A stretch of DNA of 64,000 nucleotides from Perna viridis (GCA_037379345.1 CM074512.1:66423597-66487596); one strand, 5' to 3'. Positions 724 through 57,100 are shown, counted from the stretch's first letter. Notes: generated by a model not told the origin, from the sequence alone. Numbers and translations: made by a program.

Positions 724-1184
724 TCCAATTAATTATCCTAATATTAAAATTTTAAAGCACTTTGAAATTAAAAGCAAACATGGGACATCCTGCAATCAAG
801 GCTAGGCATCACAAAGGCATTTTCTAACAGCTGTGGACTGAGAAGAAAAAGTGGGGTCTAGGATTTGAAGTTTAAGGGGCAAACAAAACAAGAGAAAGCC
901 ATTCTTGATTATTACCAGTACTAAATGAAAGTATTAATGTTTGCAAATACTTTACTAACTTTATGTGTTATGAAAATCGTTTTGTGTATTGCTATTCTCA
1001 ATTGTCTAATGTTTCAACCTATGCCTTGCCAATTTTAGGGAGGGCCCATACTGGCCAGATGCTCATCTAAATCTGCTCCAGCATTCAAAGTTAATTCAAT
1101 TCAATTTAAATTTTAAATAATTCAAATGTAAACATCAGATTTCTTTCATTTGAAGATTTAAGTTAAATTCAAGAGTTTTTTTTA

Positions 1185-1886: not shown

Positions 1887-2042
1887 CTTTAGTCTATCAT
1901 GAGCAATATAGAAAAATTTGGAACCAGTCTGTATGGAATAGCTGTAGATCTGATCCATGTCAACATCAACAGCAGATAGTGTACCAAGTTCTACATCTAC
2001 AGAATTCTCAGGAACACTCAAAGAACCATCATACTGTATATC
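1887..2042 (-). CDS. Exon 33: EC17 first part (gene continues left of the window)
   Basis: DIQYDGSLSVPENS...VDVDMDQ...HDRLK; 156 nt; donor gttagt. Confidence 0.88.
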
Positions 2043-5000
2043 CTAAAAACCAAGACAAACTAATAAACACCTGCAATCACATGATACAGCTTTACCTCCT
2101 CCTTTTTTTGTGGTGTTTCAAGTTTTTGGGAACAACAGAAGCTGATCTTTAATGATGAACATCAAAATGAATCATACTGTGAAAGTACTCTTGTTCGAGG
2201 ATTACCAGTATTTCGTGGTTTTCATGAAAAGGGGATTTCAATTGATGTGTGTACTGAAAACCTCAAAACCACGAATTCAAGGATCCATGAACTTATATTT
2301 CTTCCCTAATCCATGAAAACTTTTTAAAAAAATTGGACAAAAAAAAAAAAAAATGAAAAGAAAGCATATATAAATAAAATTCCACTTGTCAGGAGATTTA
2401 AATCTCCTTATCAACTGTCCATTTACTAAGCTTAGGAGATTTAAAAAATCGTCTTTATACACACTGTTAATATCTTCTAGAAAAAAAAAGGACAATGGGA
2501 GACAAATATCACTAGATGTATATGCCTCACTAACTCCTTTCAACGTTTCCATTACTTTACATTGAAATACAGTGGATTCCGCTTAATTGCATAGCCTATT
2601 TGCCAGTAAAAATTATGCAAATAACCGGGCTATTCTTATAACCGAAATTACGATTTTACCGGAAATGTGAGTTCAGGTAAGACGACGATACTGTGGATCA
2701 ACCAGGGATATCACTGTTCAACATTTCTGATCTGGTATTTAATTGTTATAGACCTTCTCATTGTATGTGTCATTGACCTCGATATATTCCTATGAAGTGT
2801 GGATAGTATGGGGCACCTTAGGGTAGTTGAATTTCATTAGACATTGTACTGAATGAATGAGGACTTTTAATTTTCAGTTGATATTTATGCCTAGTAACCC
2901 AAGCTCACTAAAAACTGTTAAGCTCATTAAAGAAAATTAAATTTACATTGATAATCATTTGTAGTCGGAAGAATTTAAATAGGGACAAAAAATACCCCAA
3001 GCCGCATCATTAGGTGATGTTTGGCATGTCGTCAGAAGTCATCGTTTACCTAGGTGCTTGTTTATTTTAATGTAATTAGAAATCATTTAAATTGTCTTTT
3101 ATGTCCATTATGTTTTTAATCCATTATTAACACCTCTTGATTGATGATAATCTAGTTTTTACAACAATAAATATGATATTTATGACCCAAAGGCTTAAAA
3201 TAGAATTTGGGTAAACCTGTCTTTACCTGGATGAGGCAAAATTCTCTTAATAAACCGAAATGCACCTGCAAGGCCTATGCAAATAAGCGATTTTTTCCCT
3301 AATAGAATAATAGGAAATGGTTATGTGCAGGAGTAAATTATGCTAATAACCGAAATATGCAATAAAGCGATATGCAATTAAGTGGAGTCGACTGTACTAT
3401 AATCAGTCTGTAGAGCATAATTTGCAGTCAAAATTCGTACTAAAAAAAACATAAAAAATCAGTTAACACCTCTGAAAGACAAGCATCAAAATTGAAAACT
3501 TACAGTGGGAGGGTCATTGACATTTCCAATGGACAACACGACCTGTTTGTTGATTTTTATACCTTCACCATCAGCAGCATAAAATAGAAGGTCAACAGAA
3601 GATTCTGTCTCAAAATCAAAGACGACAGCACTTCGTACATCTGATGTACACCTTATTCCCTGAAATGGAAAATATTTCTTTGTTATACAAGATCATTATT
3701 GATTGTTGGGGTTTAATGCCCAAACAGGAATATTTCAGCTATATTCAGGCAATATACAAAATCAAGAATATCTAATAATACTATGATTATTCATCTTCAC
3801 CAATAACAAGACAAGACCTATGGTTAAAAATACTTTTTACTGTTCAGTGTTTTAAAAATATGAATATAGAACATATCATTCATAAAGCTTATCAATGCAA
3901 AACAATTTACTATGATTTCATTATAATTTATTATCATATACTTATAGAAAATAAGTATCATTTCTTACTGTATAATAAAGCAAGTTTTAGGGCCAAAAAT
4001 TTGATATTTTTCAAGATTGTCTAAGCGGGTTGATATCTAAATGTTTTTAAATGCCTTGGAATGATATTACATGGCTTTCCGTAAGTGATATTAAACCCCT
4101 TTCCGTAAACGCTCGGCAATTATCGTATTTGTTTACAATATGGCGTCTAACGACGAAGCAGACAAACAGCTGGGTATGATGGAAATAGAGATTGACAATA
4201 CCATGGAATATATAGAGTGTATGAAGAATATTAATACAAAATGTATAATTGTGAGTGATATGAAAGTGCTATCGCGTTGGCCGGAAGAACATTCAGAACA
4301 ACAACAAACTGAAGAAATTCCAGTTCCCGAACTGGATAAAATATTGGCTCGGTTCTTCAGATGTTGACCAGCAGCTTCTATCTACCTCCAAAGTAGCTGA
4401 ACTGGATTATGCATTAAGAGATATTTCCAACTATGAGACATTAAATGTTAACCTGGTCCAGTAAGAAACTTCATTGATGCTACAGAAGTGAACAATGATA
4501 ATATGAAAGACAAGATAGTAAATATGTTGGCTGGGGCACAGGTGACCGGAAATATAACAATTAACTTTTCAAGTTAAATTCATGACCAAAAAAAATATAA
4601 ATAAACAATAAAAGTTTCAACATCAAATATCTGTTATTATCCCATTATTATTAAATTGTTGAAAAATAAATATTATGTTTTTTGGTGTTTTAAAAATGTA
4701 TGATTTAATAGCCTTATTTTGCACTCCTATTGTGAAGCATATGATAAAAGAACATCACATAACATTTTTGATATGTATTATATGCCCTTGGTTGATATTG
4801 GTCCTCGAGCCTGCAGCTCTTGGGCCAATATCAAACCTTGGGATAATAATACATGTGATATCAAAAATCTCATGTGATAATCTGATAATATCATACACCA
4901 TGATATTAACTTTGATAAACTGATGATAACATAACTTCATACGGTATGATACTTACTTTGATTATTTGAATATAACTTCATACTGCATGCCCGGTGCATG

Positions 5001-8000
5001 ATATTTACTTTGGTTAATTGATTATAACTTTATGCATAAGGCAGGATATTAACTTTAATTAATTGATAACATAACCTAATACAGTATGATATTTACTTTG
5101 GTTAATTGAATATAACTTAATGTCAAACTGCATGATATTTACTTTGATTAACTGATTATAACTTAACGTGATACTTCATAATATTTACTTTGATTAATTG
5201 ATTATAACTATATGCATAAGGCAGGATATTAGCATTGATTAACTGATGATAACATAACCTCGTGCGGCATGATACTTTGATTAATTGATCATTACTTTAT
5301 GTCGTACAGTATGATATTTACTTTGATTTGAAGTCTAGCTGCTGCTGAAAAAAAACAAAATTCCAGCCCTTCCCCACCCTTTCGAGGAGGCTCTTGACTT
5401 CAGTCATTTTTTTTTAGAATGAGTTTGCAAACTTTTCATCCAATGAAAAAGGAGCAACTCATAGAGTATAATGGGAAACAAATTAAATTCTGATCTTTAA
5501 AGAAACAAAAATGTATTTCAACGTTACCTGACTAACAGGAATGCATTTCTGGTTATACAATTTGATTTTGGTAGAGGTTGCTGTAAAGGTCAAAGCATCT
5601 GAACCATCAGGGTCAAACGCCACCAATTGACCAATCAGTGTTTCTGTTACTTTGTTTTCGTCAATGATTGGTTTGTTTTCAGGATATGGGTAGGTCTTTC
5701 CAGAGATTGCCTCTAGTGCTAGGTTATATGGAGATTCATTCACATTGATAACATGAAGGACAAATTCAGCTGATGTCTAAAATAAACCAATAATTATAGT
5801 CATCATAAAAGACATGCAAAAAGAAATGCTGGAATAAAGAGGGTACATCCAAAAACTGCAAAGCATTTTTCAAACTATCTATTTTATTGCAATGATATCT
5901 TTTTGGTGAAAAATAAATGCTGGGCTCAAAGTCACATATAACAAAAAATCTACCTAACCATGAGTTACAGTGGTCTTAACCTCTGACCTACTGATATTAA
6001 AATCAATTGTTTTCCATGCCAATTAAGCTTCTACCTATACAAGTTTCATTCAAATTCCACTGCCATTAAAAGTTATGTGGCAATGAAACCAATCATGGAT
6101 TAATAGAAGGACGGACAAAAGTTTTGGCTAAATACAAACCAACCTCCCTTTTTTAGGAAAATTGGGGGTCAAAAATGCTATATAAAGGCTAGTAGAAGTC
6201 AACCCCCCCCCCCATAAAATATATTACCCCAATTTCAGTTTTCAAAAATGTAACTAGTCCACCACAATCCAGAGTTACACTCAATATAAGAAGAATTTTT
6301 TATATTAAAGGTACAAACAAGAAATTCTTGAACAAAATAATAAACAACAAATAAACACACACACAAAATTTACTGCAAAACACGAAAGAACCAATCAAAT
6401 ACAGCAGTAAAAAACACAAGCAGTTATGGTTAAAGCCCCTTCAGCTCCCCCTCTTGTGATTGTAATAGATACATTAATATTGTGTTAATTTACCTTTTGG
6501 GGGTCAGCCCTACCATCAACAGCCTCCACTGAAATGGTATAACTGGACTTCACTTCGTAATCCAGAGTTCCACTGAGTGTAATTGTGTTATCGACCATAG
6601 TAAAAACCCCTTCAGCTCCTGTGATTGTGTAGATATAGACATCATCTGCATCTTGATCTTCAACCTGCAAGAGGAATGTGATCACAAGATTTAAACAAGC
6701 AAATTAAATTCGCCAGATATACAAAATGTGAAATGCCCAGAAATAATTTGTTGTATCTTCTAACTACTTTATATAAAATATGAAAGTGTATGCATTCAAA
6801 CAATAAATCAATCCTTTATTTGAAGGTTGATTCTTCAGAAATATTTGGTTTTGTAATTTATTTCATTGCTTACAATCATAGTGGCAACTTTACTGCCAGT
6901 AGGCAAATCCTCGGGCAAGTTCTCCATTTTGATGGCAAGGTTGTAAGGTGAATCATTGACATCCTCAACATCAATAGTCAAAGTAAACTCCTTCTCCATT
7001 GGTGGTTTACCATTGTCTGTTACCATGACAACAACAACATGGTTGGTGGCAGACTCAAAATCAAGTAAACATTTGTCATTACCCATGCTTTTACAACCTT
7101 CTCCAACAGATTTTACCTGTGAAAACAAATACAAGTCTGTCTTCAGATGATATAAACCCAGACACTTGTTTAAGTTCATTATGGCTAACTGAATACCTGT
7201 CTAAACAGTGAACCAGTTCTAAAGTACATAAAGGGTTCAGATTAGGACAGTTAACACTGTACTTTCAAAAGAATGCATTTTTCAATGTATCCTATGTAAG
7301 AAGTGGACATGCAATAATGGCTTTTTTTCCAAACTATATATACCAACTGTATACCAAGTGTACCCAAAGTGATGACATTAGCTAATCAAAACACCTGTAT
7401 ACCAAGTGTACCCAAAGTGATGGCATAAGCTAACCAAAACACCTGTATACCAAGTGTACCCAAAATGATGGCATTAGCTAACCATATCTACTGTATACCA
7501 AGTGTACCCAAAGTGATGGCATAAGCTAACCATATCTACTGTATACCAAGTGTACCCAAAGTGATGACATTAGCTAAATATATCTACTGCATACCAAGTG
7601 TATCCCAAGTGATGACATTAGCTAACTATATCTACTGCATACCAAGTGTTTCCCAAGTGATGACATTAGCTAACCATATCTACTGTATACCAAGTGTACC
7701 CGAAGTGATGAAATTAGCTAAATATATCTACTGCATACCAAGTGTATCCCAAGTGATGACATTAGCTAACCATATCTACTGCATACCAAGTGTACCCAAA
7801 GTGATGACATTAGCTAACCATATCTACGGCATACCAAGTGTACCCAAAGTGATGACATTAGCTAACCATAACAACTGTATATCAAGTGTACCCAAAGTGA
7901 TGACATTAGCTAACTATATCTACTGCATACCAAGTGTACCCAAAGTGATGAAATTAGCTAATCATATCAACAGTATACCAAGTGTACACAAAGTGATGAC

Positions 8001-26000: not shown

Positions 26001-27061
26001 TAACTAGTCAAGCAGGGGCATTAAAATGTAGCTTTACCTGTGTTTCACACAATGAGTCTGACAATTTCAGAATTCCCAATCCCTCAGAATCTTTGATATT
26101 AAATGACATATCCAGGGCATCACCATGTTCTCCTTTTAAAGTGCCAATCATTTCATCAACAGTGGAATTCTCCGGAATACTTGGTTTACCATCCTCAAAT
26201 GTAGTGGTGCCACCTTCACTGGTAAATGTCAAGGTTATAAAGGTTTCTCCTATCACAGTAATTGAGAACATCTTATCTGTCTGTGATAAAAAATAAAATG
26301 TCACAAGAAATGGATTCCAAACAACTTCTTTGGTTCCTACCACTCCCAATCAGAGTGGATTTCTAATATGCAAATGTGATAATTGTTAATCGCAGGTAGA
26401 AAATTTATACCTAGTATTATATAATTTATGCAAATTACTTGTTAATTGTAATTCCACACCTTTGGTTGTGAAACAGAAGAAAAAGATTCTTATACTCGTC
26501 ATCTATTGAAGATCTGGGATTTCTTCTGCAAGTGTGAGAAATTCTTTGTTTTTTCACTATTTCTGTGGAGATTCACTCCTCAAAAGATGGAATTTTTCTC
26601 ACTCGTGGAAAAAATCCTTGTCACATATTCAATAGAGACTTATGTAAGAATCTATTATACTTCAATGTTATTCCAATACACTAAAAGCATGCATGTTAAT
26701 TACAAAGAAGACATTGACAGTAATAGTCCTTGTTAAGAAAATGTTGATTTCAAATCAAAAATCAATTTATTGCTCTTATATTTTTGTTTTCTGGTTTTAT
26801 TGAATTAAAATATAAGAAATGTTTCCAATCGTTGGTTAGATTATTGAATATAAACAACTTTGGGTCAGTTTACCCTGCAACATAAACCATCTCCAAGTTG
26901 TTTATATCTTATAATTTAACCAAAAATTAAAAACAATCCTTAAATAAATAACAACAAATTATTGAGAAAACCTATATAATAAACAGGAAAATAATTTGGT
27001 TATCACAAACAATCAATGTATGATTACTCCTACTGACCTTTTTTGTAAGCTTTTTTTTTTT

Positions 27062-27104
<43 letters not shown>

Positions 27105-42100: not shown

Positions 42101-45100
42101 TGAGAATGTGTACTTTAAAATCACATTTGTAATTTTTTTTGGAATGCTGGTATTAAAGTTTCATAAATTTTTACAAACTACTTTTCAAGTTATTGCATGA
42201 ACACCAAGTGTGTTAGCAGGACAAAAACAGCACAGATGCAACACAGAGGACAACACAGATGAAAACAATGACAACATAGATGAAAACAATGACAACATAG
42301 ATACAACACAAAAGACTACACAGATGAAAATATAGATGACTACACAGATGCCAACACAGAAGACAAAACAAGGATGAAAAGACAGAAGACAACAGATGAC
42401 AACACAGATGACAACAATGACAACATAGATTCGTTTGAATATTATCGTTTTCAAATCCACAAATTAAAGATTTTACGAACCAATTATTTCCCCCTAAACC
42501 ACAAAACTTGGTACCCACCAATAAAAGCACTTTTACAGTAACTGAACAGCAATTAACAGCAAAAATTCAAAAAAGGCATTATATACATGAATTGCTAAAA
42601 TTTCATATCATCTTCTCCTGGTTAATTTCAGGACAAATTTAGAAAGCTTTAAATTTCAAAGGAGACAAATATTAACTTCACAAAAAGCTATCAAATTTTT
42701 TACCTGCAAATTGACGCACTTGGGATTTTTCAAGGACAACCTGTCATTTGTATTATCAAACAAGGTCAAGGTCACTTTGTCATCCTTATCATAATCCTTG
42801 ATGACAACTGTACCAACCACCAGTGCTGAAAAAAAAAAATTATATTATTTTTAATTTTCAAATTCAAATTTTAATTCTATATTCAAAGTATTTGCTATAT
42901 TTATTATAGTATATTCTACAACCTTATATCTAACCAAAATATGGAGGTCACTTGTTTTAACTAGAAAAACTATGCAATGTTTACTAAATTGGTACCATTA
43001 AATTGATACCCCCACCCACTACTCCATGTTGGGGAATGGCCAAGTCAACATTTTTCTGTGTCATACCTCAAAAAACATTTAGATCAAAATCTAAAAAAGG
43101 AGGTCACATCAATAATGTAGGAGGAATTGTGAAAAAGAGGGTACCCCCTCTGTATAACGAAAGTATAGATGGAAAGACAGACGTTCCTTATCACTATATA
43201 TTTCCCTGCTTGCAAAATGGGAGAGGGTATAAAAATCACATACAAAATGTTTTTTACATTATGTTCTATGCTGAATGGGTTTATCATAATTTTGAAGTTA
43301 GCAGGTAACAATAAAATAATTACTATGAAAGTACTTTTATTCTGGCATGTCAATTTTCTTGGACTGCAGACCAATCTTTGGTTCATGGATTCTTGAATTC
43401 GTGGTTTGATATTTACCACAGTACAAACAAACAGAAAATATGTATTTTGTCAGGAGTTTAATTTTGTGGTTTGAGTCAACCAAGAAATACACAAAAATTG
43501 GTACCCCACAAATATAAGTATTTTCACAGTATGAAAATTTTTAGCCAAAAGAACAGTTGAAAATGTGTGGAAAAGTCCATAAAAGCACATATGTACAACT
43601 TGTAGTAAATATATACAACAATAAGATATCCATGGACTTCGTGAATCATTCTTAATCATCAAATTTACATGTCAACGTAAACAATGGCCTTATATAACCT
43701 GATCTAGGGTGCGAAAATTTTGACAGACCATGTCAGACATTTTATCAAATTTCAGCAGACGTTTGCATCAGCCTTTTACCTGCCTACATCAAGAATAAAC
43801 TTTAAAAACCCTTTTTTGTAGTTATTTAAAGACAAATACTGGAATTTGTGTTATTCCATCACATACTCTGTCTTTTATAAAATATCTGAACGAGTGAATG
43901 AGTTCAGGTTCGACCACATCTGGCCGTTCTGACATGTAAACAAAACATCGCGTCTCTCAGACTTTTTCATCACATCGCTGAAAACTTCTGAGTGATGAAA
44001 AAAATGTTAATTATTTTAAAAATAAAAACATGAATACATTTTGTATATTGATTTGAATGGGTTGTTGACTTATGTATTAAAAAGATTCAATCGATGAATT
44101 ATTAATTACAAACTACAACTGATTCAGCACATGAGCTTTCGTTACCACTGAAAGATCGGCAAGAAAATGATGGATTTGTCAATCTTTTTCTTATTTAAAT
44201 AAAGTAACACATGTAAGAAAATTCTCCAAATCACTTCAATTAATTCGTACATGCAATGGTGCTGCATGTGTAGCGTTAATTTAATGATGCAATCAACTAA
44301 TCAGTTACAGTTAAATCACAGTCACAGGTGGCTGCACATTGGCTAATTGATACTGACCTACACCTGTCAAATAATTAACAATAAACAATTAGGAGACATG
44401 TAGAAGGATGTTTATACAGCAATAAAACCACGCTGACTGTAATTTATAGTGGTTAACAATTTTTTTATGTACGATATTGGAAAATGGTCGCTGGTCATTT
44501 GCAAAATTTGTCGGGCAATGACCGGCATTTTTGACCATTTCTGGATGATTGAACCTGATTAATAACATTCTCCCTCAGACAGAGCCATGCATATTTTGTA
44601 CTTGTATTGTCCAGCATATACATTTTACATTTAAAAAAAAAGACAAATATAGGACAGCATAATAAGAAACACATGCCAACATCAAGAATTTTTGCAGTAG
44701 CTATAATCAAAGTAGGAGTGTTTATGGCTCCTATAAGGCTAAAATCTACTGAAAATTAATCATCAAATTTTAAAGTGCATATTATGAATTAGGAGACTTG
44801 AATCTATACTGAAAATTGAGAAAAGATCAGAACTTCTGAACATTCTTGCATCAAAAGAACAAAAGAACTGTTTGAATTTGAACAAATATCAGATATTCTG
44901 TTCAGCTTGTACTTTATGGTCACTTTTTGGTCATATTTTGGTGCAACAAAATAGTGTCCATACCAGAGAAACAACTTCATATTTAGTGAATACATTTATT
45001 ATTACATAGTTTATCATTTGTGAAAATATTCTTTGGTGTGGACATAGTTTTCTTTGTGTAAATATGTCAGAAAAGACAATAAAATCCACAATTTCTCAGC

Positions 45101-48100
45101 AGTTATTTTTTTTAAATGATATATAATTGTTGTATGATTGTGAACTTTCCTTTTCCTAACATTAATATATTTTACTATGTTTTGAAATTTTTGTGTGCTA
45201 TTACAAAAAAGTTGATATTTTTTGGGCAATATTCATATCGTAATTTCACAATAAAATATAAAAGAAAAGCACAAACCATTGCCATTTTCTTTCACTTTTG
45301 GCTTGTTGACATCATAATTCAACAAAGCATTCATAGGTGTTATCTCCAATCCAAATGGTGACTCATTGATATCTTCTATTTTAAATGTTATGGTTGATGT
45401 TACCTGTGATAGAACAATGACATATTGTGAAAGTACTTTTTTTCATAGAGTATCAATTTTCATGGTTTTCATGGGTAGGCCAAATAACAAACTTTGGTTC
45501 CCAACGAAAAAGAGATTTCCGCTGATGTGTATACTGAAAACCTAATAACCACATATACAAAAATCCACGGCCTAGTGATTCTTCCCTAATCCATAAAAAT
45601 TGGTATCCACAAATTCAAGTACTTTCACAATATAAAATACATCTACACTATTGGAAATATCAAATCTGTATATACAAACTTTAGGAAAAGGTTAGAATGC
45701 AATACCCATGTGATTCTGACTGTTTTGCAGGAAGTACAAATGAATTTGGTATTTTCCAGCAATGTACATGTATTATAATACCCTGCAAATAAGTTTATAG
45801 TGAGAAATCTCACATATACCCAGGAAAAACATATTAAACCATATCATTTCTGCCATCTCTTGAGTAAATTGTTAGGAAGCCCCTCAAACTGGTTACCAGT
45901 TTTCTGCATTAGATGTACTTCAAAATAAACAGGCATTGTGAGAATATTGCATGGCAATTCAAAGTCCCCAACGGAAGAAAAAACTGTTGAAGAGAACAGA
46001 GTGCAAACTTCATGCATAACTTGTTAACAAGAAAAGTGCTGAAAACTGAGTCTACATTCATTTTCAAAGTCAAAGGACAATAACTCATGAAAAAATCAAC
46101 TGACTGGTACAAAACTCAAACTTGATCTTTAAATTGTCATGGTAAAGCAATGTATCAAATATCAAATCATGATAAAAAAAAAGCATATTTGTTTATACTA
46201 CTTGATGACAATCTGTTTTCACTGTATTCTATGGAAAAGATCCATAAAATCTTGAACTTTGTGAAATTACAACATAGGAAATAATGGAGAGATTACCAAT
46301 TTGCAGTCAAAATTTGTAGAAAATACAGAGAATCCATAAAAGTACAAACAGACAGACAGACAGATAGACACTAAAGTAAAAAAAAAAACTGATCAATTTT
46401 CCATATTTGAATTTTTTTTTAAAATAAGAGCAGTAATAAATGCATGCAAAAATTTACCAGTACATATTAACTTGCAGTACTTACAGATAATGGTTGTCCA
46501 TTCGTCCCATCATCAGTAGATTTTACAACAATGACAAATTCTGTGAACTCTTCTGTCTCAAAGTCAAAGCTTCTGGAAGCACTGAGCACTCCATTCTTGA
46601 TACTAAACAAACCACTGGGGTCATTAACTAGGTCATATGTATGTGCCTGGTCAACATCCTCATCTTCTGTTGTCAGAGCAACCAGATCTTCTCCTGAATA
46701 GAAGAAAACTGAAGTGATTGGAAACAGTACTGAAAATACCATGTGTTGTTTGATGATACACATGTTGAGGTATTTATTTGGTGACCTAATTGTTCACTAA
46801 ATAAACTCCATAACTGTCTTAACCAGAACCTTACTGAAGTATGTTTAAAGTCTCTCACTTTCAATGTGTTTCATTTAAAATGAACTGTCTAAAAATAAGT
46901 CTACAGACCTAAAGAATTTTAAGCAAACTGACAACAAATGGCAAAGTCGCAAAAAAAACCAGTCTTCTGTGGTATGACATCTTGTATAATTTCAATAAGA
47001 TCTATACACAAGTACTCAAGTTATTATCTGGAATCCAAATAATATCCACAGACACCAGAATCAAAATTTTCAGTACTTAGGAATATTGCTACACCTATAA
47101 AATCAGGCAGGTCCAATAGAAACAGTAAAGCATCAATTTCTATTTTTTTGTAGACTCTTTCTTACTGAAATTTATTCACTATAACCAACAAAAAAACCTA
47201 CACACTGTGTAGTGCAGATCTGTAAGGTCAAAAGAGGGTCATAAACCATTCTAACTTGATTGGAATGCAATTCAAAATTCAATTTAAACAGTCCATAAAT
47301 AACTTTCTTCATCAATACTATGTAACCTCTAACTTGAGTTTTTGAGGGATTTTGATTTATAGTTTCAGCAAAATAATGTCTGCAATAAAACTAGGAGTAT
47401 AAAAATATTTACCTGCCTGATTTTCACATAGGCATGATTATATCATACCTTCTATTGGAAATACTGGTCTATTTCCACAACACTAAAAAAAAACACTAGT
47501 TGGCACTGAAAATGATTAAAAGGTATCACCAGAAAAAAAGAACAGCAACTCCTGCAAAAACTTAGCCTGTAGTGCTGAGAGGGGAGCGAAGAAAAACAAC
47601 TAATGTAGAATATAATTTAACCAGTTTAAATATAATTTTAGGATCAGAAAGGACAAATTCTTGACAGATTCTTTTCTCTAGTGCATTGGAGGGTTTTCAT
47701 TTTTGTAAAGAAAAAGGCTGAGTTGTTCCAATTAATCAAACCTGCTTCAGCTTCCTCTGGAATAGATGGTGAGTCCAGTTTTACAGCAGTTGGTTTATCA
47801 TTGACATCAGAGAGTTTGATATGGACATCAAAGTATGCCTTCTCACGAGGACTTCCGTCATCTACAGCCATGATGGTTATGGTTCGGCGCTTTAGTTTTT
47901 CACGGTTCAGTAAACAGAAATTCCCACCCTCTGTAGGACACTTTGGATCAGATTGTCTGGCTACCTGTTTTAGAATTTTCTCAATAATATACATATGTAT
48001 TACATAAGTAACAAGCCTAATATTTTATGAAACATTTTTTAATTCCATGTAAATGAATTCAATACTACTTGTTGTTTGAAAAAAATGTTCATCTAACTAC

Positions 48101-51100
48101 ATTAGTTGACCAACATCAAAAATATTTCCAAAACATTTCTCTTGAATACAGAAATTTTGGAAAGGTCAAATTCTAGCAGAATTCAAATGAGCTAAGTTTT
48201 TGTTATCAAAGTTTCTATTCTCATTTTTAAGAACTAAATTTGATTAAATACTGGCTAATTAAAACCATACAAATAACAGATACAACTTATTTTTTAGGCC
48301 ATGGACTTTAAGTTCTTGGAATGGAATAAGGTACAGGTAAAAAAAAAAAGGGTATCAAAAGGCCTTTGTTTTCAAATGTATTTGTATCGTTTTGATCCAA
48401 AAACAGTTATTGGGGATTTTAGTCAGTGGCAGATCTAGATGAGTTTCCAGAAATTGGAACCCCTTTGATAAGAAAATATGTTAGTTTTGTTCTAAATAAG
48501 GACAAAAACGAGAAAATGATTGCCTGGCCCCCCTCTGAAATTTCTGGATCAAACCCCAACCCCCCCTCCCAATTTTAAAATAAATTCCTTGATCCCCACT
48601 GTTTAATTGTCTATTGTATACATAATTGTTTCAGTTTTAGAAACAACTTTATACCAAAACTTGCCCAGTGCAGCAGGGGACAAAGTCAAATTACCCCAAA
48701 GTTCATAAAAACTACCCATATGTTTGATTTTTACTTCTTCAAAACCCAAGCAACTCTTAACAGATTTGGCTTCCACCATAATTTTAAAACTTTGTCAAGT
48801 GAACAAGAACTAATATTTAACATGGTATTTTGGTATGTTCTTCATCTTTCTTATTGTTTTGTTTCAATATTTGAATTCAACAGAATGTTTCTATATTACC
48901 TTTACACAAGTCTGTCCATTTTCCTGGTAAGTAGCAAACATCTTGAGGTTAGAATTGACAAGAAGAAAGGATAATGTTTGACTTGGATCGTCGTCAACCC
49001 CGGAGATACATCCTACTTTGGTATTGTTCATACTGTTTTCTGGTATAGTATTTGGTGTTAACTGAAACATATAACTAGATATCATTAGATGGTGTCCATC
49101 CATATTGGCCCCACTACAAAAAAAGAAGTTGGTTCGGTAAGGGCAAAATTTTGCCTAAAATTCATGAAGAAAATTTAATTGTTTCTCCAGCTCTTTAATG
49201 TGTTTTATAGTTGATTTGATTGGTTTATGGTAATAATTGGAATATACAGTTGTATATGTCCTTCAAACTTGGCTGAGATTGGGAAAATCTGTTAAAAAGG
49301 CTGGAAAACACCAAATGTTGTGGAGTCTTTCAACCTTTAAACAATGGCCACATGCATGCTGATTCTCATGCTTCATATATTTTGTGTATAATTGTTAGTT
49401 ACAATTCATGTAACAGTACCCTGAGTCAACAGATGTGTGGCCACTTCCATTCCACACAAAAACCATCTTAAAAATTGTAGAAATGTTAAAAGTTAAAGGT
49501 TTTTGTAAAAGCTGCATAAATGCATACTGTTATTTCTGTAATAACTTCATAAATCTTTTCAAAAACATCTTATATTCAGAGTTTGTGATCATTTTACTAT
49601 ACTTTAGCTTTAATCAAATTTTTAAAATGCCCTAATTATGAGGCCAAAAGGGGTCCTTACCAAACTTTCTCCTTTGTAAAAGATAGACTGTTGGCAGAAC
49701 TGCATGTCAAATTTGTAATCAGGTCATCAAAGATAAGAAAGTCAGTCATGACTCATGACACAATTTTTGACAATAACTAAAGTCTTAAAAGAACCCATCA
49801 CTCACCATTAGAAATCTGGTTGCTATGACATTTGATCTAGCAGAAAAGCAGAACAAGATCAAATCATTTATAGAGACCCTTACTGATAGAATTCTCGCTA
49901 ATGAATATAATTTCTACATTAATGACAAGTTTGTTTCTATCTCTAATTCTTTTCATGATGTATTGAGATAAGGATTAATCAAGAAAACCAAGATTCTAGC
50001 GGAAATCAAAAGAATGTAATCCAGGGACAAAGACCAGATATTGAAAACAGACAAACACAACAAAGAATATAAAATAACAAAAATTATACATACAAAGTAA
50101 CAAAAGTAATTAAGCAACTCGGACTCCACTAAAAACTCGGAGCATGGACCAGGTGTACCAGTAGGGTAAGCATGTTCTGCTTTTCTAGAGGATAAAAACT
50201 GCTAAGATCTTCAAAAATCAATAACTCTAATAGGAAGTCATTCTAAAAATTTTGTGGGTGGGCCATAATAAACAGCTGTACATATCACAGTATAGCAGTA
50301 CATCCCAAATACTGGTATTAGTGTTTAGGATCCTATAACTTGGATACAAAATTTTTAAAGGAATAAAAAAAAGAAACAATAGGGAACATTTTCACAAAGA
50401 CAAATACTATACCTAAATATTAATAAAAATGTATTTCTAAAGGCATTTAACCTCTAGTTCTACATGAAACAGCAGAACAATACAATTTGTGAAGGGGAGA
50501 GAATGCAATTAGGTTAGGGTCTCACTAACCACTTCTAACGTTTCCATTACTTTACATGTTAAAAAAGTAATTTTCAAAGTCTCACTGTGAATTCCCAGGA
50601 CAAATGACATCTTAAAGCTGCATACCGTTGCAAAGCTTGGAAAATAAGGCTTCCAAAATCATTATGCTAATGGTACGATGATAGTAGAAATTCTTCACAA
50701 AATTTACTTGAATAAATAATACTGAAAATCCACATTTTTACCTGTTCTGCTAACTGACAGCATGGAGGCAAATTACTCACACATGTAAACAATATTCATA
50801 CACTTTTGTAGTTAATTACATATATGATTTTAAAGTACACATTCTCAGCATTATTTTGACTACTTTTAATCATAATACACACAAATAATGCACTTACAAT
50901 GCATATGTCTAAGCTCATTGTGTTTTTGGTACTACATAGAGGGGTGGCCATTTGACCCGGAAGTGGTTAGTGAGACCTAGGATGCATACAATATACCTAC
51001 ATAGACTGCTCTAGGAGGATCGTTAGCATTTACAATCTCAAAAGGAAACAATTTCTCAATGTAATCACCAGCCAGATCTGTACTTCTGATGGTCAGGTTC

Positions 51101-54100
51101 CATCTACAACACATCAAACAAAAAAGGAAAACCTAAAATATGAACGTCAAAAACCAACTGATCTGACAACATACTTTTTTTTGAGGAAGTCTATTTGAGA
51201 TGACCAACATTGATCTCTTCATAATAAGATGTATATTTTCCAAGGTTTAACAGATCTATATCATGGGAAAAACTGATTTTCCTTAAGCCTATACTTGATT
51301 TAAAGTATTTCTCCTTTCTATGGTAAAATTAAGATTTCAACATCTCGCAAAAGATCCCTTGATGAAAATTTCAATTTTACCAGCTCAAGTGGAGAGTAAT
51401 TTACCAGTAAACCCCATAGATGCCAACCTCCTTGATACAATCAGTAAAGAAAAATTCAGTTATCTGCAATTTGGCACCTTTGTCAGTAATCTTCATTAAA
51501 ACTGAAATTGACATTTCTAATTTGTTTTGGATGAAATGTGTTTTGTTCACTATCTAGAAACAGCAAGATTAATCTTAGCTGAGATTGACAACATTTGTGA
51601 AACCTGAATGCACTGCATGATCTTCATTCCCATTGTTCTTATTTCAATGATATCTGCAAATATTATTTCCGGTTTCCTAAACCGGGAATGGCTTCTACTG
51701 TAAACAATTGAAAATCAAAAAAAAAATTGAAAAATTCATGAAATTATGGACAAATTGTGAAGGTAGGCACTTCTGTAACCTATCATCATTGAACAAGAAT
51801 CTAAATTTAACCTCAACCATTTGAACAATAGAAATTGCTTGTTTTCGCCTAGTATTCAGTTTACTCAGGATCAAAATACATTTCAACTGTTTTGAAAGAT
51901 GTCCACTTTAGACAGGTTTAAAGTTTAAAAAGGATCTGGTTTAGAATGTTTAATTGAATATCTGTATTTTTTCTTTCCCCTATCTTAACTCAGCAAGAAT
52001 CTGTACTTTTCATTACCACTCTAATAGTATAGCTTCCACATATTCAATAATACTGAATAAAAAATCATATTGGTTTACACAAATAATTTCACGGATTTTA
52101 ATGAAATCTACTAACCAGAAATAACTTCAATGGGAAATCAACTTAATGCATTTCATCAAATGTCAACACTGGGTGTAATAGTTACATATGTTACAGAAAG
52201 ATACTGAATAAGAATGGAGAAAGATATGTACAAAATCCATTCCTTGTTGGACATAACTTTTTGTTTACATAGAGTAACTGAGTACAACCCCAAGTGGGAG
52301 GTGTGAGATAGTCACATATCTCAGACATTTATGGAGTACTTTTATTGTGCATTAGGACAAAAAGAAAGTAAAATCGATTAATAAAGTCAAATATAACTTA
52401 TTCTCAAAAAGTTGAAAGAGGTACTTTTACTGATCAAATCAGATGAAAGTTTTGAAAAAAACTGATACTTAATTAAATTTTTTTAACAAGTAGAACAAAG
52501 TACTTTATCATGTTTCCTGTATATATAAACTGTTACATATCATTTGATATTCAAAGCTGAGAGAGTTAAATAAAATACTTCACAGTTTTATATCATAAAC
52601 AATTATAATTAAATCATGATTAATTCAAGCAACAAGTATGGACACGATATTTAAACTTGATTAAGCGCTTAATTTGGGTAGTGATTAAAACTTCCACAAG
52701 TTTCAAACCAGACCTGAAAGTGATCAAAGAATTAATAAAAGAACAGCGTTTCAAAGTCTCCCACCTAAAAAGATACATTTCAAACTTTAAATAACTTCTG
52801 TAAAAATCATTCAGCCACAACCAGAGTCGAACTTAATCAGTAACTTCTCATAGTAAGACTACATACAAAAGATAAAATCAAATGGTAAAAACATTACAAA
52901 AACAAGAGGCTCCCAGGAGCCTGAATCACTCACCTGGTTAAATGTTTGCCTTTCAAGGGCAATAACTCTTAACAAGAAGCTGATGGACAATTTTGACTCC
53001 ATGAAGACTTCGTTAGGACTTATCATGAGGATCCTTTCATCATTGGAAGTTTCATTCAATCTATCATAGTTTTCAAGATATTCAAATGGACTGAAAACTG
53101 CAAAAAAACGTAATGTTTTGCCTTTCAAGGACAATAACTCTTATATGGAGTCGTCTGACAACTTTGATCCCTGGAGACTTTTGTTGGCCTTATAATAAGA
53201 ATCATTTCACCAATTGAAAGTTTCATTCTACCTATCATAGTTTACAAGATATAGGCTGAAAACTGTAAAAAAAGTCATTTTTCACCTCTCAAAGGCAATA
53301 ACCCTTACATGGAGTCGTCTGACAACTTTGGTCCCTTGAAGACTTGTAGGCTCTATAATAAGGATATTTCAGCAACTGAAAGATATTGGCCAAACCTAAC
53401 GGTTTTGGAGATATATGCAAAAAAATACTGTATGACTCCTATGTTCTATTTTTAGTAAAGGCGGCAATGTTTTATAACCGATCAAAAATCCAAACACTCA
53501 TTTTGTCAGGGATACCCTAAAAAACAAAAATATCAACTTTCATTGAATTCTGTATAGTAGTTTTTGAGGGGAAGACTTTTGAAAGTAATAACATCAAAAA
53601 CAGCAAAAAACATCCAAAAAAAGGCAATAACTCCAACTTGGGTCAACAGATTTTCACCAAAATTTGACCACAGATAGATCTCAACATGCTAAATACTTTA
53701 ACACAATGTCAGAATTTGGCTAAACCTAACGGTTTTGTAGAGATAAGCAAAAATCTGCTGTCTGACTCCTGTATTCTATTTTTAGTAACGGCGGTATTGT
53801 TTTTTTTTTAACCTATCAAAAATCCAAACGGTCATTTTGTTAGGGATACCCTAAAAAACAAAAATACCAACTGTCATTGAATTCTGTATAGTAGTTTTTG
53901 AGGGGAAGACTTTTGAAAGTAATAACATCAAAAACAGCAAAAAACGTCCAAAAAGGGCAATAACTCCGACATGGGTCGACAGATTTTCACCAAAATTTGA
54001 CCACATACAGATCTCAGCATGCTGAATAGTTTAATCTACTCAGAATTTGGCTAAACCTAAGGATTTTGGAAATACATGCAAAAATCTGCTGTCTGACCCC

Positions 54101-57100
54101 TATGTTCTATTTTTAGTAATGGTGGGTTTCAGAGGAGAAGATGTTTGAAAAATTATTAACGACGACATCAGACGACGATGACAGACACCAAGTGAAGGCA
54201 ATAGCTCACATGGCCTACATACCAAAAACAAACTTATTTGGTAGGAGCATTACAAAAAAAAAAGATCAGAAAACCCTGACGGACGGACAGACGGCATTTC
54301 CATGTCCCCTCGCGACGTGATGCAATTAAACATACGTATAGGAGATAATCAAAATGCATATTTTTATATTTTTTATATATTTTTACGCCTTTTTGGACCT
54401 TAACTCCAGAAAGAAAAACCATACACACATTCTTAGTTGAAACCTGCTTGATTTTGGCCTTTTTATACCTCTTCTCTTAGAGATTAAGGATAAAAACAAT
54501 AAAGATTTTGGCCTTTTTATAATGATTTCTTTTCCTTGACATTAAGTGTTGAAAAACTAAAAATCAAATAAAAATATTCCTTTTGTAGTATGTCACCTTA
54601 TTTTACAATTACATGGAGATCCATATACTTTTACCTATGCAATTGTTTTGAAACAGGCATACACATTTTTGGCCCTTTTCAGTCCCTTATTCTTAAACAG
54701 ATCAGGTCAAAACTAAGCCTAAACTTTGAGGTATAGAACATAGTGGTAACATATCCTAGAGATTTATATGTTTTATCTTTGAAACAAAGTATCTATAAAC
54801 ACTACCAACAACCCACACAATGACAGCACCATACCATAATATAATGGCAAATTTCACATCTGAATAAAAGTGATCAAATATGTGGCTCAATAAAAAACTA
54901 GAAGCCCTGTTTATCACAGGAGCCCCTGCCTCATTTGTTAATAGTGATTTTTTTTTTTTAGTAAATCAAATGTGTCTGTAAGACAATAATGATGCCCCCG
55001 CTTGCTAGATTTGCCAAATTAGGAACAAGTTTATTTTTTTATGAAGAAATGGTTTGCAGATTCAGAAATCCTTCCAAGACTTGTGCTACTCATGGTCTGG
55101 GGATCAATTTGGGGTTCAGAAATTCCTAAATATATGCATATCTGCATATTGTATCCTGGCCACATAGTGTCATGAGATTCTGTTTGGTAGTGTCAGACAA
55201 GTTGCGATGAGAAAAAGAGGACCGACGGACGTATTAATGAACGCATAAAAAATGTTCATACCAACCATAACAAATCACCTTGTTGCTTGGGATATATTTC
55301 TGACAAAAATAACAAAGTCTAACTTCCACCAATTTCCGTAATATTTCATGAAAAATCAAGATCCTATGACCTTGCACACTATCATTATGTGTAGAAACAT
55401 CCTGCAAAAAATATTTTAGATGTAGTTCAAAAACTATGGAAAGAGAAAGCCATAAAAGCCATATAGCCCTATTTCTGATGAAAATGACTCAGTCTAGCTA
55501 TCACCAATTTCTGTAATATTTCATGAAAATCATAATCCTATGACCCTGCACACCTTCATCATGTGTAGAAATATCCTGTAAAATATTTCAGATGTAGTTC
55601 AAAAATTGTACAATGAGATAGCTGAACAAGCCAGGATCCATATATTTCTGAGTAAAATTGCTAAGTCTAACTATCACCAATTTCCATAATATTTCATGAA
55701 AATCAAAATCCTTTGACCCTGCACACTTTAATCATAGAAATATCCTGTAAAATATTTTAGATGTAGTTCGAAAACTGTACAAGGGGATACCCGGACAAGC
55801 CATGATCATATGTAGTCCGGATGGACAGACAGACGAACAGACGGGCAGGGGTAAATTAATATGCCCCCCCTTTTTATTGCAGGGGCATGAAGTTGCATGG
55901 GCTGTTGTGCCAGAGATATCCCATTGAATTTGATATTGAACCGCACCCAAAATTATTTACAAAGTATTCCCTATCCATATAAAGCCACAAATCAAATATG
56001 AAATCAATCCTTCCATTGGGAGTTGAGGTTTTTGTGATTAAAATTGTCTCTATCAATCCATGGTGAAAAATAGCCAAGTCCCATGAAACAGGAAGTTTAT
56101 ATTGTAAAGCAATCTGTCACAGACCAAATTTAAAATCAAACCATATATTGGGAGCCAAGATAATTGCCACAGAATTTGAATGAACGGACTGACAGACACA
56201 CAAGGTGATTCCAAAATCACCCAGTCATTTCAATATATCAAGTGATATATTTGTGATGTGTATTTGCAGTGATATGTGATGGAAAACTTTGTAACAGACA
56301 AACATGACACTACAACTGTGAAATATTCTAGTATAAACATATTTACCGGTATTTACATGGTAACTTTAGATAGTAATGTCAAGTAAGCATATTTGTGGCA
56401 TCAATTTTTGTGATTTTCACATGATTAATGTTTTTAGTTTTAAAAATAATTTTTGCTCTTACTATTTTTCATGCTTATCTATTCTAGTAAATTAAGTGAA
56501 AATTATTATGCAAAAAATATATAGTCTAACTAAAGATGAGTGATTTACAGTAACCCTTTTCTATAGAGCAGAGGAAAAATATACAATTGTCAAACAGGAA
56601 GTTTAAGCTAATAACTGAGCATAAAGATTGTAGATCACTCACTTTGTAGGTGGTTCCTCATAGTCAGCTGTTCTCTTTAGACAAAGTCTGTGCTCCATTA
56701 TATAAAATCTATCAGATACATCCTGAACAATAGTGTAGACATGTTTGTCATAATCATCATCAACTGTCCCCATATAAAGGCAGTATCCAGCAGGGGTATT
56801 CTCGTCTATCTTTGTCTTGGCTAGGTCTATTTCAATCTGAAATTAGGAGTACACAGTAAATCTAGTTAAGAGGCTGTCCATGTTAAAATCAGGCAGATCC
56901 TGTGATACGAGTGGCACATGGTAAATTTTATCCCACTGAATTTTTTGTTCCAATGTAATGTATATAGCATATGTATGTCAAAAAGTATTAAGTTTATTTT
57001 GAATCAACAATTGATAGCTCAGAAAAAGATATTTAATCTCCCTAACAAAGCAACAAAATTTTCCTCAAATTAAAGAGTTGTCTCCCATTTTTTCAATTAA

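What the first reader, a model, noticed from the sequence alone, without database searches (positions are those of the whole stretch)
1887..56836. Cadherin ectodomain built from a four-domain super-repeat with two alternating cysteine-loop types
Seen: once spliced, the repeats cycle plain / A / plain / B four times. Type A domains (EC2, 6, 10, 14) carry a short Cys-bounded insert just before the LDYE-type motif: CPTEGGNFC, CNNKPC, CLSEGGGTC, CKSMGNDKC. Type B domains (EC4, 8, 12, 16) carry a different Cys pair: CVNLQ|EVNVYC, CGQQ|NTTGTQC, CETQ|DQKRIC, CIPVSQ|GIRC. In three of four type B domains an extended N-terminal linker ends in KPxV/IxEN. Odd-numbered domains after EC1 have no Cys. Established: typical Fat/Dachsous/protocadherin EC repeats are Cys-poor. 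Inference: every second domain presents a sequence-variable disulfide-closed loop, making a periodic binding or cross-linking rod. This may be an uncharacterised invertebrate cadherin family that generic 'Fat4-like' annotation hides. I cannot verify novelty without a search.
Basis: partly seen in the sequence, partly recalled or inferred. Interest (0 to 1): 0.82.

Follow-up and report, generated by a model that had tools for sequence, protein, structure and literature searches.

The report
Ancient cadherin with four-domain super-repeat
The window holds the middle of a giant, expressed cell-adhesion (cadherin) gene whose domains repeat in a strict plain/loop-A/plain/loop-B order; relatives from sponges and sea anemones to molluscs keep the loop-A/plain/loop-B core, yet they are filed only as 'Fat4-like' and I found no paper on them.

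Summary
Confirmed and extended. On the minus strand, 30 GT..AG exons (56836 to 1887) read as 1769 aa without a stop. This is EC1 to the first half of EC17. Spliced transcript contigs confirm six junctions.

The domains fall into four classes, P1-A-P2-B, encoded by a repeated 7-exon cassette. Position mod 4 predicts class in trees (p=0.0007). In 70 domains from five species, A and B form near-perfect clades.

The gene spans about 109 kb: signal peptide, about 6 TSP1, EGF, a sushi-like module, 30 EC and EGFs. No laminin-G domain was found in the four exons scanned here or in two full-length homologues.

Homologues named 'Fat 4-like' or 'cadherin-23-like' occur in molluscs, nemerteans, cnidarians and three sponges. 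They keep the A-P2-B triad. FAT4, Dachsous and bacterial controls lack it.

The cysteines come in pairs. Two AlphaFold tetrads (pLDDT 92 and 94) place the B pair cross-strand.

Its consensus is C-L-x-x-G-G-x-[YF]-C.

Function is untested. I infer disulfide-stapled loops bracketing the short P2 domain.

Two earlier notes on this window (TSP1 head, repeated donor site) agree with this. The genome-wide word look-up for 'cadherin' showed no title naming the pattern on other DNA.

The parts
63119..63247 (-). Open frame holding a TSP1-repeat exon of the N-terminal head. Exact exon ends were not set.
   Evidence: Pfam TSP1_spondin E=8.7e-11. Collinear tblastn match to Mya P0014 residues 339-374.
60364..60531 (-). 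EGF-like module and start of a sushi-like module. This is the aligned part of the open frame 60307-60567.
   Evidence: Weak cEGF/FXa_inhibition hits. 50% identity to Mya P0014 residues 382-436.
58176..58391 (-). Open frame with the sushi-like C-terminal half, which leads into EC1.
   Evidence: Read by eye against the printed Mya sequence: my reading of its Cys spacing and its '...CSPKNNPP' end resembles the stretch of P0014 just before EC1. No Pfam hit.
56643..56836 (-). Exon 1 of the modelled stretch: EC1, first two thirds (2 Cys).
51001..51103 (-). Exon 2: end of EC1 with the NANDPP linker.
48900..49061 (-). Exon 3: first half of EC2 (type A).
47742..47964 (-). Exon 4: second half of EC2 with A loop CPTEGGNFC (47940-47914), plus the start of EC3.
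46485..46693 (-). Exon 5: middle of EC3 (P2, no Cys).
45277..45403 (-). Exon 6: end of EC3 plus the extended linker ending in KPKVKEN.
42704..42825 (-). Exon 7: first half of EC4 (type B), ending CVNLQ.
41492..41653 (-). Exon 8: second half of EC4, starting EVNVYC.
40245..40412 (-). Exon 9: first half of EC5 (P1).
39604..39768 (-). Exon 10: second half of EC5.
37316..37462 (-). Exon 11: first half of EC6 (type A).
   Evidence: The joint 37316|36766 is seen in RNA contigs.
36547..36766 (-). Exon 12: second half of EC6 with A loop CNNKPC (36745-36728), plus the start of EC7.
   Evidence: Both flanking joints are seen in RNA contigs. Pfam Cadherin E=0.004 on the open frame.
35847..36031 (-). Exon 13: middle of EC7 (P2).
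   Evidence: Joints 36547|36031 and 35847|34800 are seen.
34588..34800 (-). Exon 14: end of EC7 plus the first half of EC8 (type B), ending CGQQ.
   Evidence: Joints seen.
33932..34096 (-). Exon 15: second half of EC8, starting NTTGTQC.
   Evidence: Joints 34588|34096 and 33932|33372 are seen.
33205..33372 (-). Exon 16: first half of EC9 (P1).
   Evidence: Joints seen.
31567..31731 (-). Exon 17: second half of EC9.
   Evidence: The joint 33205|31731 is seen.
30353..30499 (-). Exon 18: first half of EC10 (type A).
29880..30072 (-). Exon 19: second half of EC10 with A loop CLSEGGGTC (30051-30025), plus the start of EC11.
27185..27414 (-). Exon 20: middle of EC11 (P2).
26038..26280 (-). Exon 21: end of EC11 (no DxNDxP motif), linker GKPSIPEN, and first half of EC12 (type B), ending CETQ.
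22305..22466 (-). Exon 22: second half of EC12, starting DQKRIC.
21444..21618 (-). Exon 23: first half of EC13 (P1). The donor is revised to 21444.
   Evidence: No RNA evidence.
16216..16364 (-). Exon 24: second half of EC13. The acceptor is revised to 16364.
15055..15189 (-). Exon 25: first half of EC14 (type A).
6874..7116 (-). Exon 26: second half of EC14 with A loop CKSMGNDKC (7095-7069), plus the start of EC15.
   Evidence: Pfam Cadherin E=3.4e-5 on the open frame. This exon was the query of the representative search.
6494..6664 (-). Exon 27: middle of EC15 (P2).
5528..5776 (-). Exon 28: end of EC15, linker NKPIIDEN, and first half of EC16 (type B), ending CIPVSQ.
3504..3659 (-). Exon 29: second half of EC16, starting GIRC.
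1887..2042 (-). Exon 30: first half of EC17 (P1). The gene continues beyond the window's low end.

Best explanation
SHOWN. The region encodes EC1 to EC17a of one giant single gene of about 109 kb on the minus strand. The product is a cadherin with this order of parts: signal peptide, about six TSP1 repeats, EGF, a sushi-like module, 30 cadherin (EC) repeats, then an EGF cluster. A membrane anchor was not modelled here, and no laminin-G domain was found where scanned.

Its first 20 EC repeats are five copies of a four-domain unit, P1-A-P2-B. Each unit is encoded by a 7-exon cassette (8 exons in the first copy). The introns of cassettes 2 to 5 lie at corresponding places in the domains, so the array very likely arose by tandem duplication of that cassette. 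The domain array itself was already in place before the mollusc and nemertean lines parted, and the A-P2-B triad is shared with sponges.

INFERRED from topology, Cys statistics and AlphaFold secondary structure:
- In A domains, an 8-11 residue insertion between strand E and the Ca-ligand 'LDYE' motif is closed by a disulfide. Its consensus is C-L-x-x-G-G-x-[YF]-C. It lies at the end of the domain that faces the next domain, P2.
- In B domains, two cysteines at the end of strand D and the start of strand E staple a long, variable D-E hairpin. It lies at the end that faces the preceding domain, P2, next to an extended P2-to-B linker.
- Each unit therefore holds a triad, A-P2-B, in which two stapled loops bracket the short, Cys-free P2 domain.

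MOST LIKELY ROLE (inference). The loops fix or stiffen the geometry of these two Ca-dependent junctions. This would give a long rod, roughly 130 nm by the usual 4.5 nm per EC, a regular periodic shape. The TSP1 head would reach matrix or cell-surface ligands.
For: Gene model and expression:
- 30 AG..GT exons, no stop.
- Six spliced joints in transcript contigs.
- Further EC exons below the window, and the TSP1 first exon 15 kb above it.

Super-repeat:
- Exon lengths and phases repeat every 7 exons.
- The window-only tree has class A as a clade, permutation p=0.0007.
- In the 70-domain, five-species tree, A is 18/18 (SH-aLRT 86) and B is 16/17 (SH-aLRT 95). The labels need 5 changes against a shuffled mean of 39. 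Domains group by position across species.

Family:
- 27 to 40% identity, collinear over about 1800 aa, to proteins of Saccostrea, Haliotis, Pecten, Lineus, Oscarella, Sycon and Nematostella.
- Class-HMM scans show P1-A*-P2-B* arrays in molluscs, nemerteans and sponges, and A*-P2-B* triads in cnidarians.
- None of this appears in FAT4, Dachsous, a cadherin-23-like protein, a bacterial cadherin, or echinoderm and hemichordate candidates.

Paired cysteines:
- Class A: 83 of 122 domains have exactly 2 Cys, 19 have 0, and only 2 have 1.
- Class B: 89 of 108 have 2, and 1 has 1.

Structure:
- Two homologous tetrads fold as four-EC rods, pLDDT 91.7 and 94.3.
- Best PDB matches are CELSR1 and protocadherin EC fragments.
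- The B cysteines lie at 381/394 and 383/395, in strands 380-383/392-400 and 382-385/393-401. These are direct cross-strand partners if the hairpin pairs up to the loop.
- The A cysteines lie in a helix-plus-loop between strands E and F.
Against: - No atomic coordinates were available, so no S-S distance was measured. The A-loop region had only about 70 pLDDT in one of the two models.
- The structural role is inferred from position alone. No contact between the loops and P2 was seen.
- EC18 has lost the A loop in the homologues I inspected (Pecten, Ylistrum, Mya, Tubulanus, Lineus), and one nemertean (Tubulanus) lacks several others, so the loop is dispensable at some positions.
- The class HMMs were trained on window, Pecten and Sycon domains, so those three rows are circular.
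- Sequence identity within classes P2 and B inside this protein is no higher than between classes (about 22-25%).
- The folded tetrads come from a homologue (a JGI metatranscriptome contig), not from the window's own protein.
Confidence: 0.55

Rival explanations
1. One reading: the disulfide-closed loops are periodic, sequence-variable binding sites, for a ligand or for partner rods, spaced every second domain.
For: B loops vary in length (7-14 residues) and in sequence between positions and species. They sit on a hairpin that the models place at the top of the domain.
Against: A loops are not variable. They carry a conserved L..GG..[YF] motif, which points to a structural constraint. No partner is known. 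No binding test was run.
Confidence: 0.2
2. The loops are a tolerated relic of the ancestral unit, with little present function. Only the EC rod and the TSP1 head matter.
For: EC18 has lost its A loop in the homologues inspected. Tubulanus lacks loops at EC10 and EC14. The protein UPI00065BAE94 lacks the EC8 loop.
Against: Both loops are kept, with paired Cys, in sponges, cnidarians and molluscs. Cnidarians kept the A-P2-B triad while changing the spacing between triads.
Confidence: 0.1
3. The cysteines form intermolecular disulfides that cross-link rods into a polymer.
For: None directly. The rods are long and periodic, which would suit a lattice.
Against: Cys occur almost only as pairs within one domain: single Cys in 2 of 122 A domains and 1 of 108 B domains. 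The B pair is cross-strand in two models.
Confidence: 0.05
4. It is simply the FAT4/Fat orthologue of this animal, as the database names of its relatives suggest.
For: NCBI names of homologues. It is a giant cadherin with EGF repeats near the membrane.
Against: There is a TSP1/EGF/sushi-like head before EC1. No laminin-G was found in two full-length homologues or in this gene's last large exon. True FAT4 proteins carry PF02210/PF00054, score about a third of the bits (about 400 against 1100-3300), and show no A/B pattern.
Confidence: 0.03

Closest known systems
FAT4 / Drosophila Fat (atypical giant cadherins)
   Same: Giant single-pass-type cadherins with about 30 EC repeats and membrane-proximal EGF repeats. 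This is the name that databases give to the relatives.
   Different: FAT4 starts with EC1 straight after the signal peptide, and has 34 EC repeats and laminin-G domains. This family has a TSP1-EGF-sushi-like head, no laminin-G hit, a P1-A-P2-B super-repeat and paired Cys loops. FAT4 proteins show no such pattern and only 22-25% identity.
CELSR/Flamingo and clustered or delta protocadherin EC fragments (solved structures, e.g. 7sz8, 8d40, 5v5x)
   Same: These are the best structural matches of the predicted tetrad: a four-EC rod, TM about 0.6, Foldseek E about 1e-21.
   Different: 17-22% identity. These are general cadherin-fold matches. The search output reports no match specific to the loops or the extended linker, and I could not inspect them without coordinates.
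Hedgling and other non-bilaterian cadherins with extra N-terminal modules (from memory of the literature; Adamska 2007, as cited in PMC12549020)
   Same: Ancient cadherins of sponges and cnidarians that carry non-cadherin domains N-terminal to the EC array.
   Different: As I recall it, Hedgling has a Hedgehog-N and a vWA domain. Here the head is TSP1 repeats, and the family survives in molluscs and nemerteans.
Titin-type super-repeats (analogy only, from general knowledge)
   Same: A long rod built by repeated duplication of a multi-domain unit, so that domains are most alike at a fixed period.
   Different: Titin is made of intracellular Ig/FN3 domains and is not related. Two full-text searches on this ('cadherin' + 'super-repeat'; 'cadherin repeats' + TSP1 + Lottia) found no paper describing such a super-repeat in cadherins.

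Membership tests
Cadherin superfamily | Extracellular cadherin (EC) repeats: Pfam PF00028 and the seven-strand EC fold. | tested here: met
   Exon-level PF00028 E=3.4e-5 and 0.004. Homologues score E=2.7e-124 and 6.3e-171. The predicted tetrad matches CELSR1 and protocadherin EC rods.
Cadherin superfamily | Ca-binding motifs at the linkers (xPEx, DxD, LDRE-like, DxNDxP). | tested here: met
   15 of 16 linkers in the window carry a D/N-x-N-D/E-x-P-like motif, and most domains have PEN-like and LDYE-like motifs. The EC11-EC12 linker lacks DxNDxP.
FAT4 / Fat | EC array starts directly after the signal peptide. | tested here: not met
   Signal peptide plus TSP1 repeats (Pfam E=1.5e-25, 6.7e-15, 9e-17, 8.7e-11), EGF and a sushi-like module precede EC1. 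These are collinear with the Mya and Tubulanus homologues.
FAT4 / Fat | Laminin-G domain(s) among the membrane-proximal EGF repeats. | tested here: not met
   No Laminin_G hit in the last large exon of this gene (EGF only) or in full-length P0014 and P0028. True FAT4 rows list PF02210/PF00054.
FAT4 / Fat | Conserved Fat cytoplasmic domain. | not tested
   The transmembrane and tail exons of this gene were not modelled. Homologue tails are short (about 50-150 aa, read from the sequences).
Unnamed TSP1-headed cadherin family (P1-A-P2-B) | A-P2-B triads with a paired-Cys loop before LDYE in A and a paired-Cys D-E hairpin in B. | tested here: met
   Four triads in the window and a fifth just outside without the A loop. 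The same triads occur in 30-odd homologues and are absent from six controls.
Unnamed TSP1-headed cadherin family (P1-A-P2-B) | Collinear similarity to family members clearly above that to other giant cadherins. | tested here: met
   Sandbox BLASTP of the model gives 1313 bits to Saccostrea and 716 to the sponge Sycon, against about 530 for repetitive bacterial cadherins. Database search scores fall from 900 or more for family members to about 400 for FAT4.

The most novel reading that the evidence does not exclude
The A-P2-B triad is a discrete structural and functional module: two disulfide-stapled loops clamping a short EC domain. It defines a so-far unnamed cadherin family that was already present in the last common ancestor of sponges and eumetazoans. 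In the searches run here no member appeared among vertebrates, insects, an echinoderm or a hemichordate. If so, this is one of the oldest animal adhesion receptors, and it has escaped study because automatic annotation calls it 'Fat4-like'. The in-frame 7-exon cassettes could also allow the rod length to be tuned by cassette skipping.
Probability: 0.35. Interest if true: 0.75.

Novelty: new variant of a known kind. Interest (0 to 1): 0.62.

Why it matters
Cadherins are central to how animals became multicellular, and the catalogue of ancient cadherin families is thought to be largely known. Here is a giant cadherin with its own head (TSP1 repeats), its own domain grammar (P1-A-P2-B) and its own conserved disulfide loops. 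It is shared by sponges, cnidarians, nemerteans and molluscs, it is expressed, and it is filed under misleading names.

It offers three things:
- a clean case of a multi-domain super-repeat in the cadherin superfamily, with the exon cassette that built it still visible;
- a testable structural idea about how inserted loops may set the geometry of Ca-dependent EC junctions;
- a candidate for early-animal adhesion or matrix biology that can be studied in Nematostella, Hydra, sponges or oysters.

Tried and rejected
- Pfam on single exons gives only weak Cadherin hits, because every EC repeat is split by introns. Identity therefore rests on homologues and on folds.
- The costly representative search with one exon was dominated by repetitive bacterial cadherin-like proteins. 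Only 7 of the 150 listed hits carried the A-type motif and were taken as family members. The word searches with full-length homologues were far more specific.
- A sub-range of a protein id is not accepted as a reference. To fold a tetrad I used a contiguous transcript-like contig of a homologue (L018) instead of the window's own split domains.
- The joined (spliced) protein of the window was never sent to a database search, family scan or fold. It was used only inside scripts, for translation, alignment, trees and BLAST against proteins already fetched.
- Six full-text searches found no paper on a TSP1-headed cadherin family or a cadherin super-repeat. Nichols 2012 is not held. I could not find Hulpiau and van Roy 2011 by term search. 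A prior catalogue entry therefore cannot be excluded.
- The Hydra Fat-like paper (PMC7430989) reports only Fat-like, Dachsous and CELSR in Hydra and does not mention TSP.
- The first choice for the EC13 junction (21454|16383, phase 0, matching the other cassettes) was dropped in favour of 21444|16364.
- No complex prediction was run, because I make no binding claim.

Full report
**What is in the window**

The window is AT-rich eukaryotic DNA (GC about 0.33) with no N runs.

I took the stop-free frames with cadherin motifs. I enumerated frame-compatible GT/AG pairs. This gave a 30-exon model from 56836 down to 1887. Every exon is flanked by AG and GT, and the product is 1769 aa without a stop.

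I built the joined protein only inside scripts. It was not sent to any search, family scan or fold tool. Those steps were done exon by exon by reference, or with database homologues.

**Expression and splicing**

One 6000-base stretch (31500-37499, EC6 to EC9) was laid against three runs kept as contigs and one raw RNA run.

Contigs of X1, X2 and X3 (two studies) skip exactly six of my introns, with CT..AC ends on the plus strand:
- 37316|36766
- 36547|36031
- 35847|34800
- 34588|34096
- 33932|33372
- 33205|31731

This covers one A loop exon and the intron that splits a B loop. The remaining junctions rest on consensus and on collinear alignment to homologues. For EC13 the homologues favour 21444|16364.

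**The repeat**

Splitting the protein at the DxNDxP-like linkers gives 16 full EC repeats and half of EC17. Lengths cycle as 103 / 111-116 / 97-102 / 109-120 residues. Cys counts, EC1 to EC17a, are 2,4,0,2,0,2,0,2,0,2,0,2,0,2,0,2,0.

I call the four classes P1, A, P2 and B.

Exon lengths and phases also cycle. Cassettes 2 to 4 have seven exons each, with corresponding intron positions. These include a phase-0 intron inside every B loop and a phase-1 intron just after the start of P2 in cassettes 1 to 3. Cassette 1 has one extra intron.

Mean identity peaks at offsets 4 and 8: 29%, against 23-27% at other offsets. A permutation of class labels gives p=0.0007. In the maximum-likelihood tree, class A is a clade (79/85). 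The four labels need 5 changes, against 9.5 when shuffled. Classes P2 and B are weak by identity alone within this protein.

**The whole gene**

The window is G000:C2:66423597-66487596. I fetched the flanks and scanned them with a profile of the window's EC repeats.

The EC exons continue for about 26 kb below the window, and none lie above EC1. The fifth cassette (EC17-EC20) again has seven exons. EC18 has no A loop, and EC20 has a B loop. EC21 to EC30 follow. Then comes one 487-codon open frame holding the last EC and several EGF repeats, with no laminin-G.

Above the window, about 15 kb away, one open frame carries a start codon, a signal-peptide-like stretch and three TSP1 repeats. Further TSP1 exons follow. 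The TSP1 and EGF exons run collinearly with the N-termini of the Mya and Tubulanus homologues. The sushi-like exon was placed by eye against the Mya sequence.

The TSP1, EGF and sushi-like exons at 57-63 kb of the window therefore belong to this gene.

**Relatives**

A search of 1.84 billion representatives with exon 26 was dominated by repetitive bacterial proteins. It did return seven true relatives:
- Mya arenaria WAR18645.1
- Pecten maximus XP_033733451.1
- Tubulanus polymorphus XP_074662803.1
- proteins of Potamilus, Tegillarca and Lymnaea
- UPI00065BAE94

Word searches with the Pecten protein and with the EC1-EC12 part of the Sycon protein added many more:
- molluscs: Saccostrea, Haliotis, Gigantopelta, Physella, Babylonia, Mactra, Solemya, Ylistrum
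- a second nemertean: Lineus
- cnidarians: Nematostella, Montipora, Dendronephthya, Rhopilema, Clytia, Hydra
- three sponges: Sycon, Oscarella, Corticium

All are named 'protocadherin Fat 4-like', 'cadherin-23-like', 'protocadherin-16-like' or 'hypothetical'.

My model is 27-40% identical to them, collinearly over about 1800 residues: Saccostrea 40%, Lineus 34%, Sycon 31%. Full-length Mya and Tubulanus proteins have 5-6 TSP1 repeats, cEGF, cadherins and EGF, and no laminin-G. True FAT4, Fat3, Dachsous and protocadherin-23 rows score about a third of the bits and carry laminin-G families.

**Conservation of the pattern**

In a tree of 70 EC repeats from this genome, Pecten, Mya, UPI00065BAE94 and Tubulanus:
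- class A is one clade (18 of 18, SH-aLRT 86);
- class B is nearly one clade (16 of 17, SH-aLRT 95);
- the labels need 5 changes, against 39 when shuffled;
- domains group by position across species (EC1, EC2, EC4, EC13, EC14, EC16).

The array is therefore older than the mollusc-nemertean split.

Class profiles were trained on window, Pecten and Sycon domains, so those three rows are circular. They were applied to 36 proteins:
- P1-A*-P2-B* repeats five times in molluscs and nemerteans.
- It repeats three times in Sycon.
- It repeats nearly six times in Oscarella.
- In six cnidarians and three unplaced proteins with the same layout, the triad A*-P2-B* is kept but is separated by three other EC repeats.
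- A vertebrate FAT4, a scallop Dachsous, a clam cadherin-23-like protein, a bacterial cadherin and the best echinoderm and hemichordate candidates show no such pattern.

The triad, not the tetrad, is therefore the most conserved unit.

**The cysteines**

Over the family:
- Class A: 83 of 122 domains have exactly two Cys, 19 have none, 11 have four, and only 2 have one.
- Class B: 89 of 108 have two, and only 1 has one.

Gain or loss in pairs is what intradomain disulfides predict.

The A loop has 7 inner residues in 75 of 106 cases, with consensus C-L-x-x-G-G-x-[YF]-C. The window's EC2 and EC10 fit it. EC14 fits partly. EC6 is the short CX4C form, as in the EC6 of other species. The B loop has 7-14 variable residues.

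**Structure**

A homologue from a JGI metatranscriptome (P0154) is encoded without interruption on contig L018. This allowed two of its tetrads to be folded by reference, with family alignments.

Both give confident four-EC models: pLDDT 91.7 and 94.3, pTM 0.66 and 0.68. Their best PDB matches are CELSR1 EC4-7 and EC1-4 and protocadherin fragments.

In both models the A cysteines lie in a short helix plus loop between strand E and strand F, just before the LxYE motif. The B cysteines lie at 381/394 and 383/395, in strands 380-383/392-400 and 382-385/393-401. These are cross-strand partners at the base of the D-E hairpin, if the hairpin pairs up to the loop.

The positions of the loops follow from the fold's topology:
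- Strand G ends at the linker to the next domain, and F is its hairpin partner. The E-F connection therefore lies at the end facing the next domain.
- By the same logic, the D-E turn lies at the end facing the previous domain.
- So the A loop faces the A/P2 junction, and the B hairpin, together with the extended linker, faces the P2/B junction.

This last step is inference.

**Interpretation**

The identity of the gene, the super-repeat, its cassette origin and its deep conservation are well supported.

The function is not known. I favour a structural role of the two stapled loops at the junctions that flank P2, for three reasons:
- the A loop is conserved in sequence;
- the cysteines are paired;
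- cnidarians kept the triad while changing the spacing between triads.

Periodic ligand binding through the variable B hairpins remains possible. Intermolecular cross-linking is unlikely, and so is orthology to FAT4.

**Literature**

Six full-text searches found no description of this family or of a cadherin super-repeat.

The Hydra study PMC7430989 reports single Fat-like, Dachsous and CELSR genes and does not mention TSP. The Nematostella matrisome paper PMC12549020 lists 'protocadherin Fat 4-like-2/-3' in its proteome tables. I could not link these to the family member found here.

The main cadherin-evolution surveys could not be consulted: Nichols 2012 is not held, and I did not find Hulpiau and van Roy 2011 by term search. 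A bare catalogue entry for such proteins cannot be excluded.

Noticed in passing
The transcript contigs of X1 and X2 use the first donor, 37316, joined to 36766.
   Followed up: partly
flank below the window (window coordinates about -10600 to -22100; loci L004-L006): The C-terminal EC repeats show a second periodicity of three. EC22, EC25 and EC28 carry a different Cys pair ('Q-T/S-H-S-C' and, later in the domain, 'x-C-x-D-x-G'). The same spacing of two-Cys domains is seen in Ylistrum and in the sponge Sycon (domains 14, 17, 20).
   Followed up: partly
window 48900-49061 and 47742-47964 (EC2): Besides its A loop, EC2 has a second Cys pair (in 'VGCISG' and 'GQTCVK'). It is conserved in Pecten, Mya, UPI00065BAE94 and Sycon, where EC2 also has 4 Cys.
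   Followed up: partly
window 57296-57427 (minus strand): A 44-codon open frame with a sushi-like Cys pattern lies between the sushi-like exon and EC1. The Mya homologue has no counterpart, so it may be an extra or decayed exon. No Pfam hit.
   Followed up: no
window 7339-11102, 23241-25327, 1181-1881, 18731-20188: Large intronic tandem arrays: 48 bp x 78, 33 bp x 61, 42 bp x 16 and 327 bp x 4.4. The first two inflate the two longest introns.
   Followed up: no
window 17015-17638 (minus strand, inside the EC13 intron): A 208-codon open frame unrelated to cadherins. By eye it looks like a fragment of a mobile-element protein. A similar frame lies about 55 kb below the window. Not analysed.
   Followed up: no
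window 32100-32500, 33700-33900, 35500-35700: Intronic stretches with very high contig depth and many variant letters in all RNA-like runs. This is typical of dispersed repeats expressed from elsewhere, not of this gene.
   Followed up: no
window 26038-26280 (EC11/EC12 linker): This one linker lacks the DxNDxP Ca-binding motif ('...ITVIGETF...'), so the EC11-EC12 junction may be Ca-free in this species.
   Followed up: no
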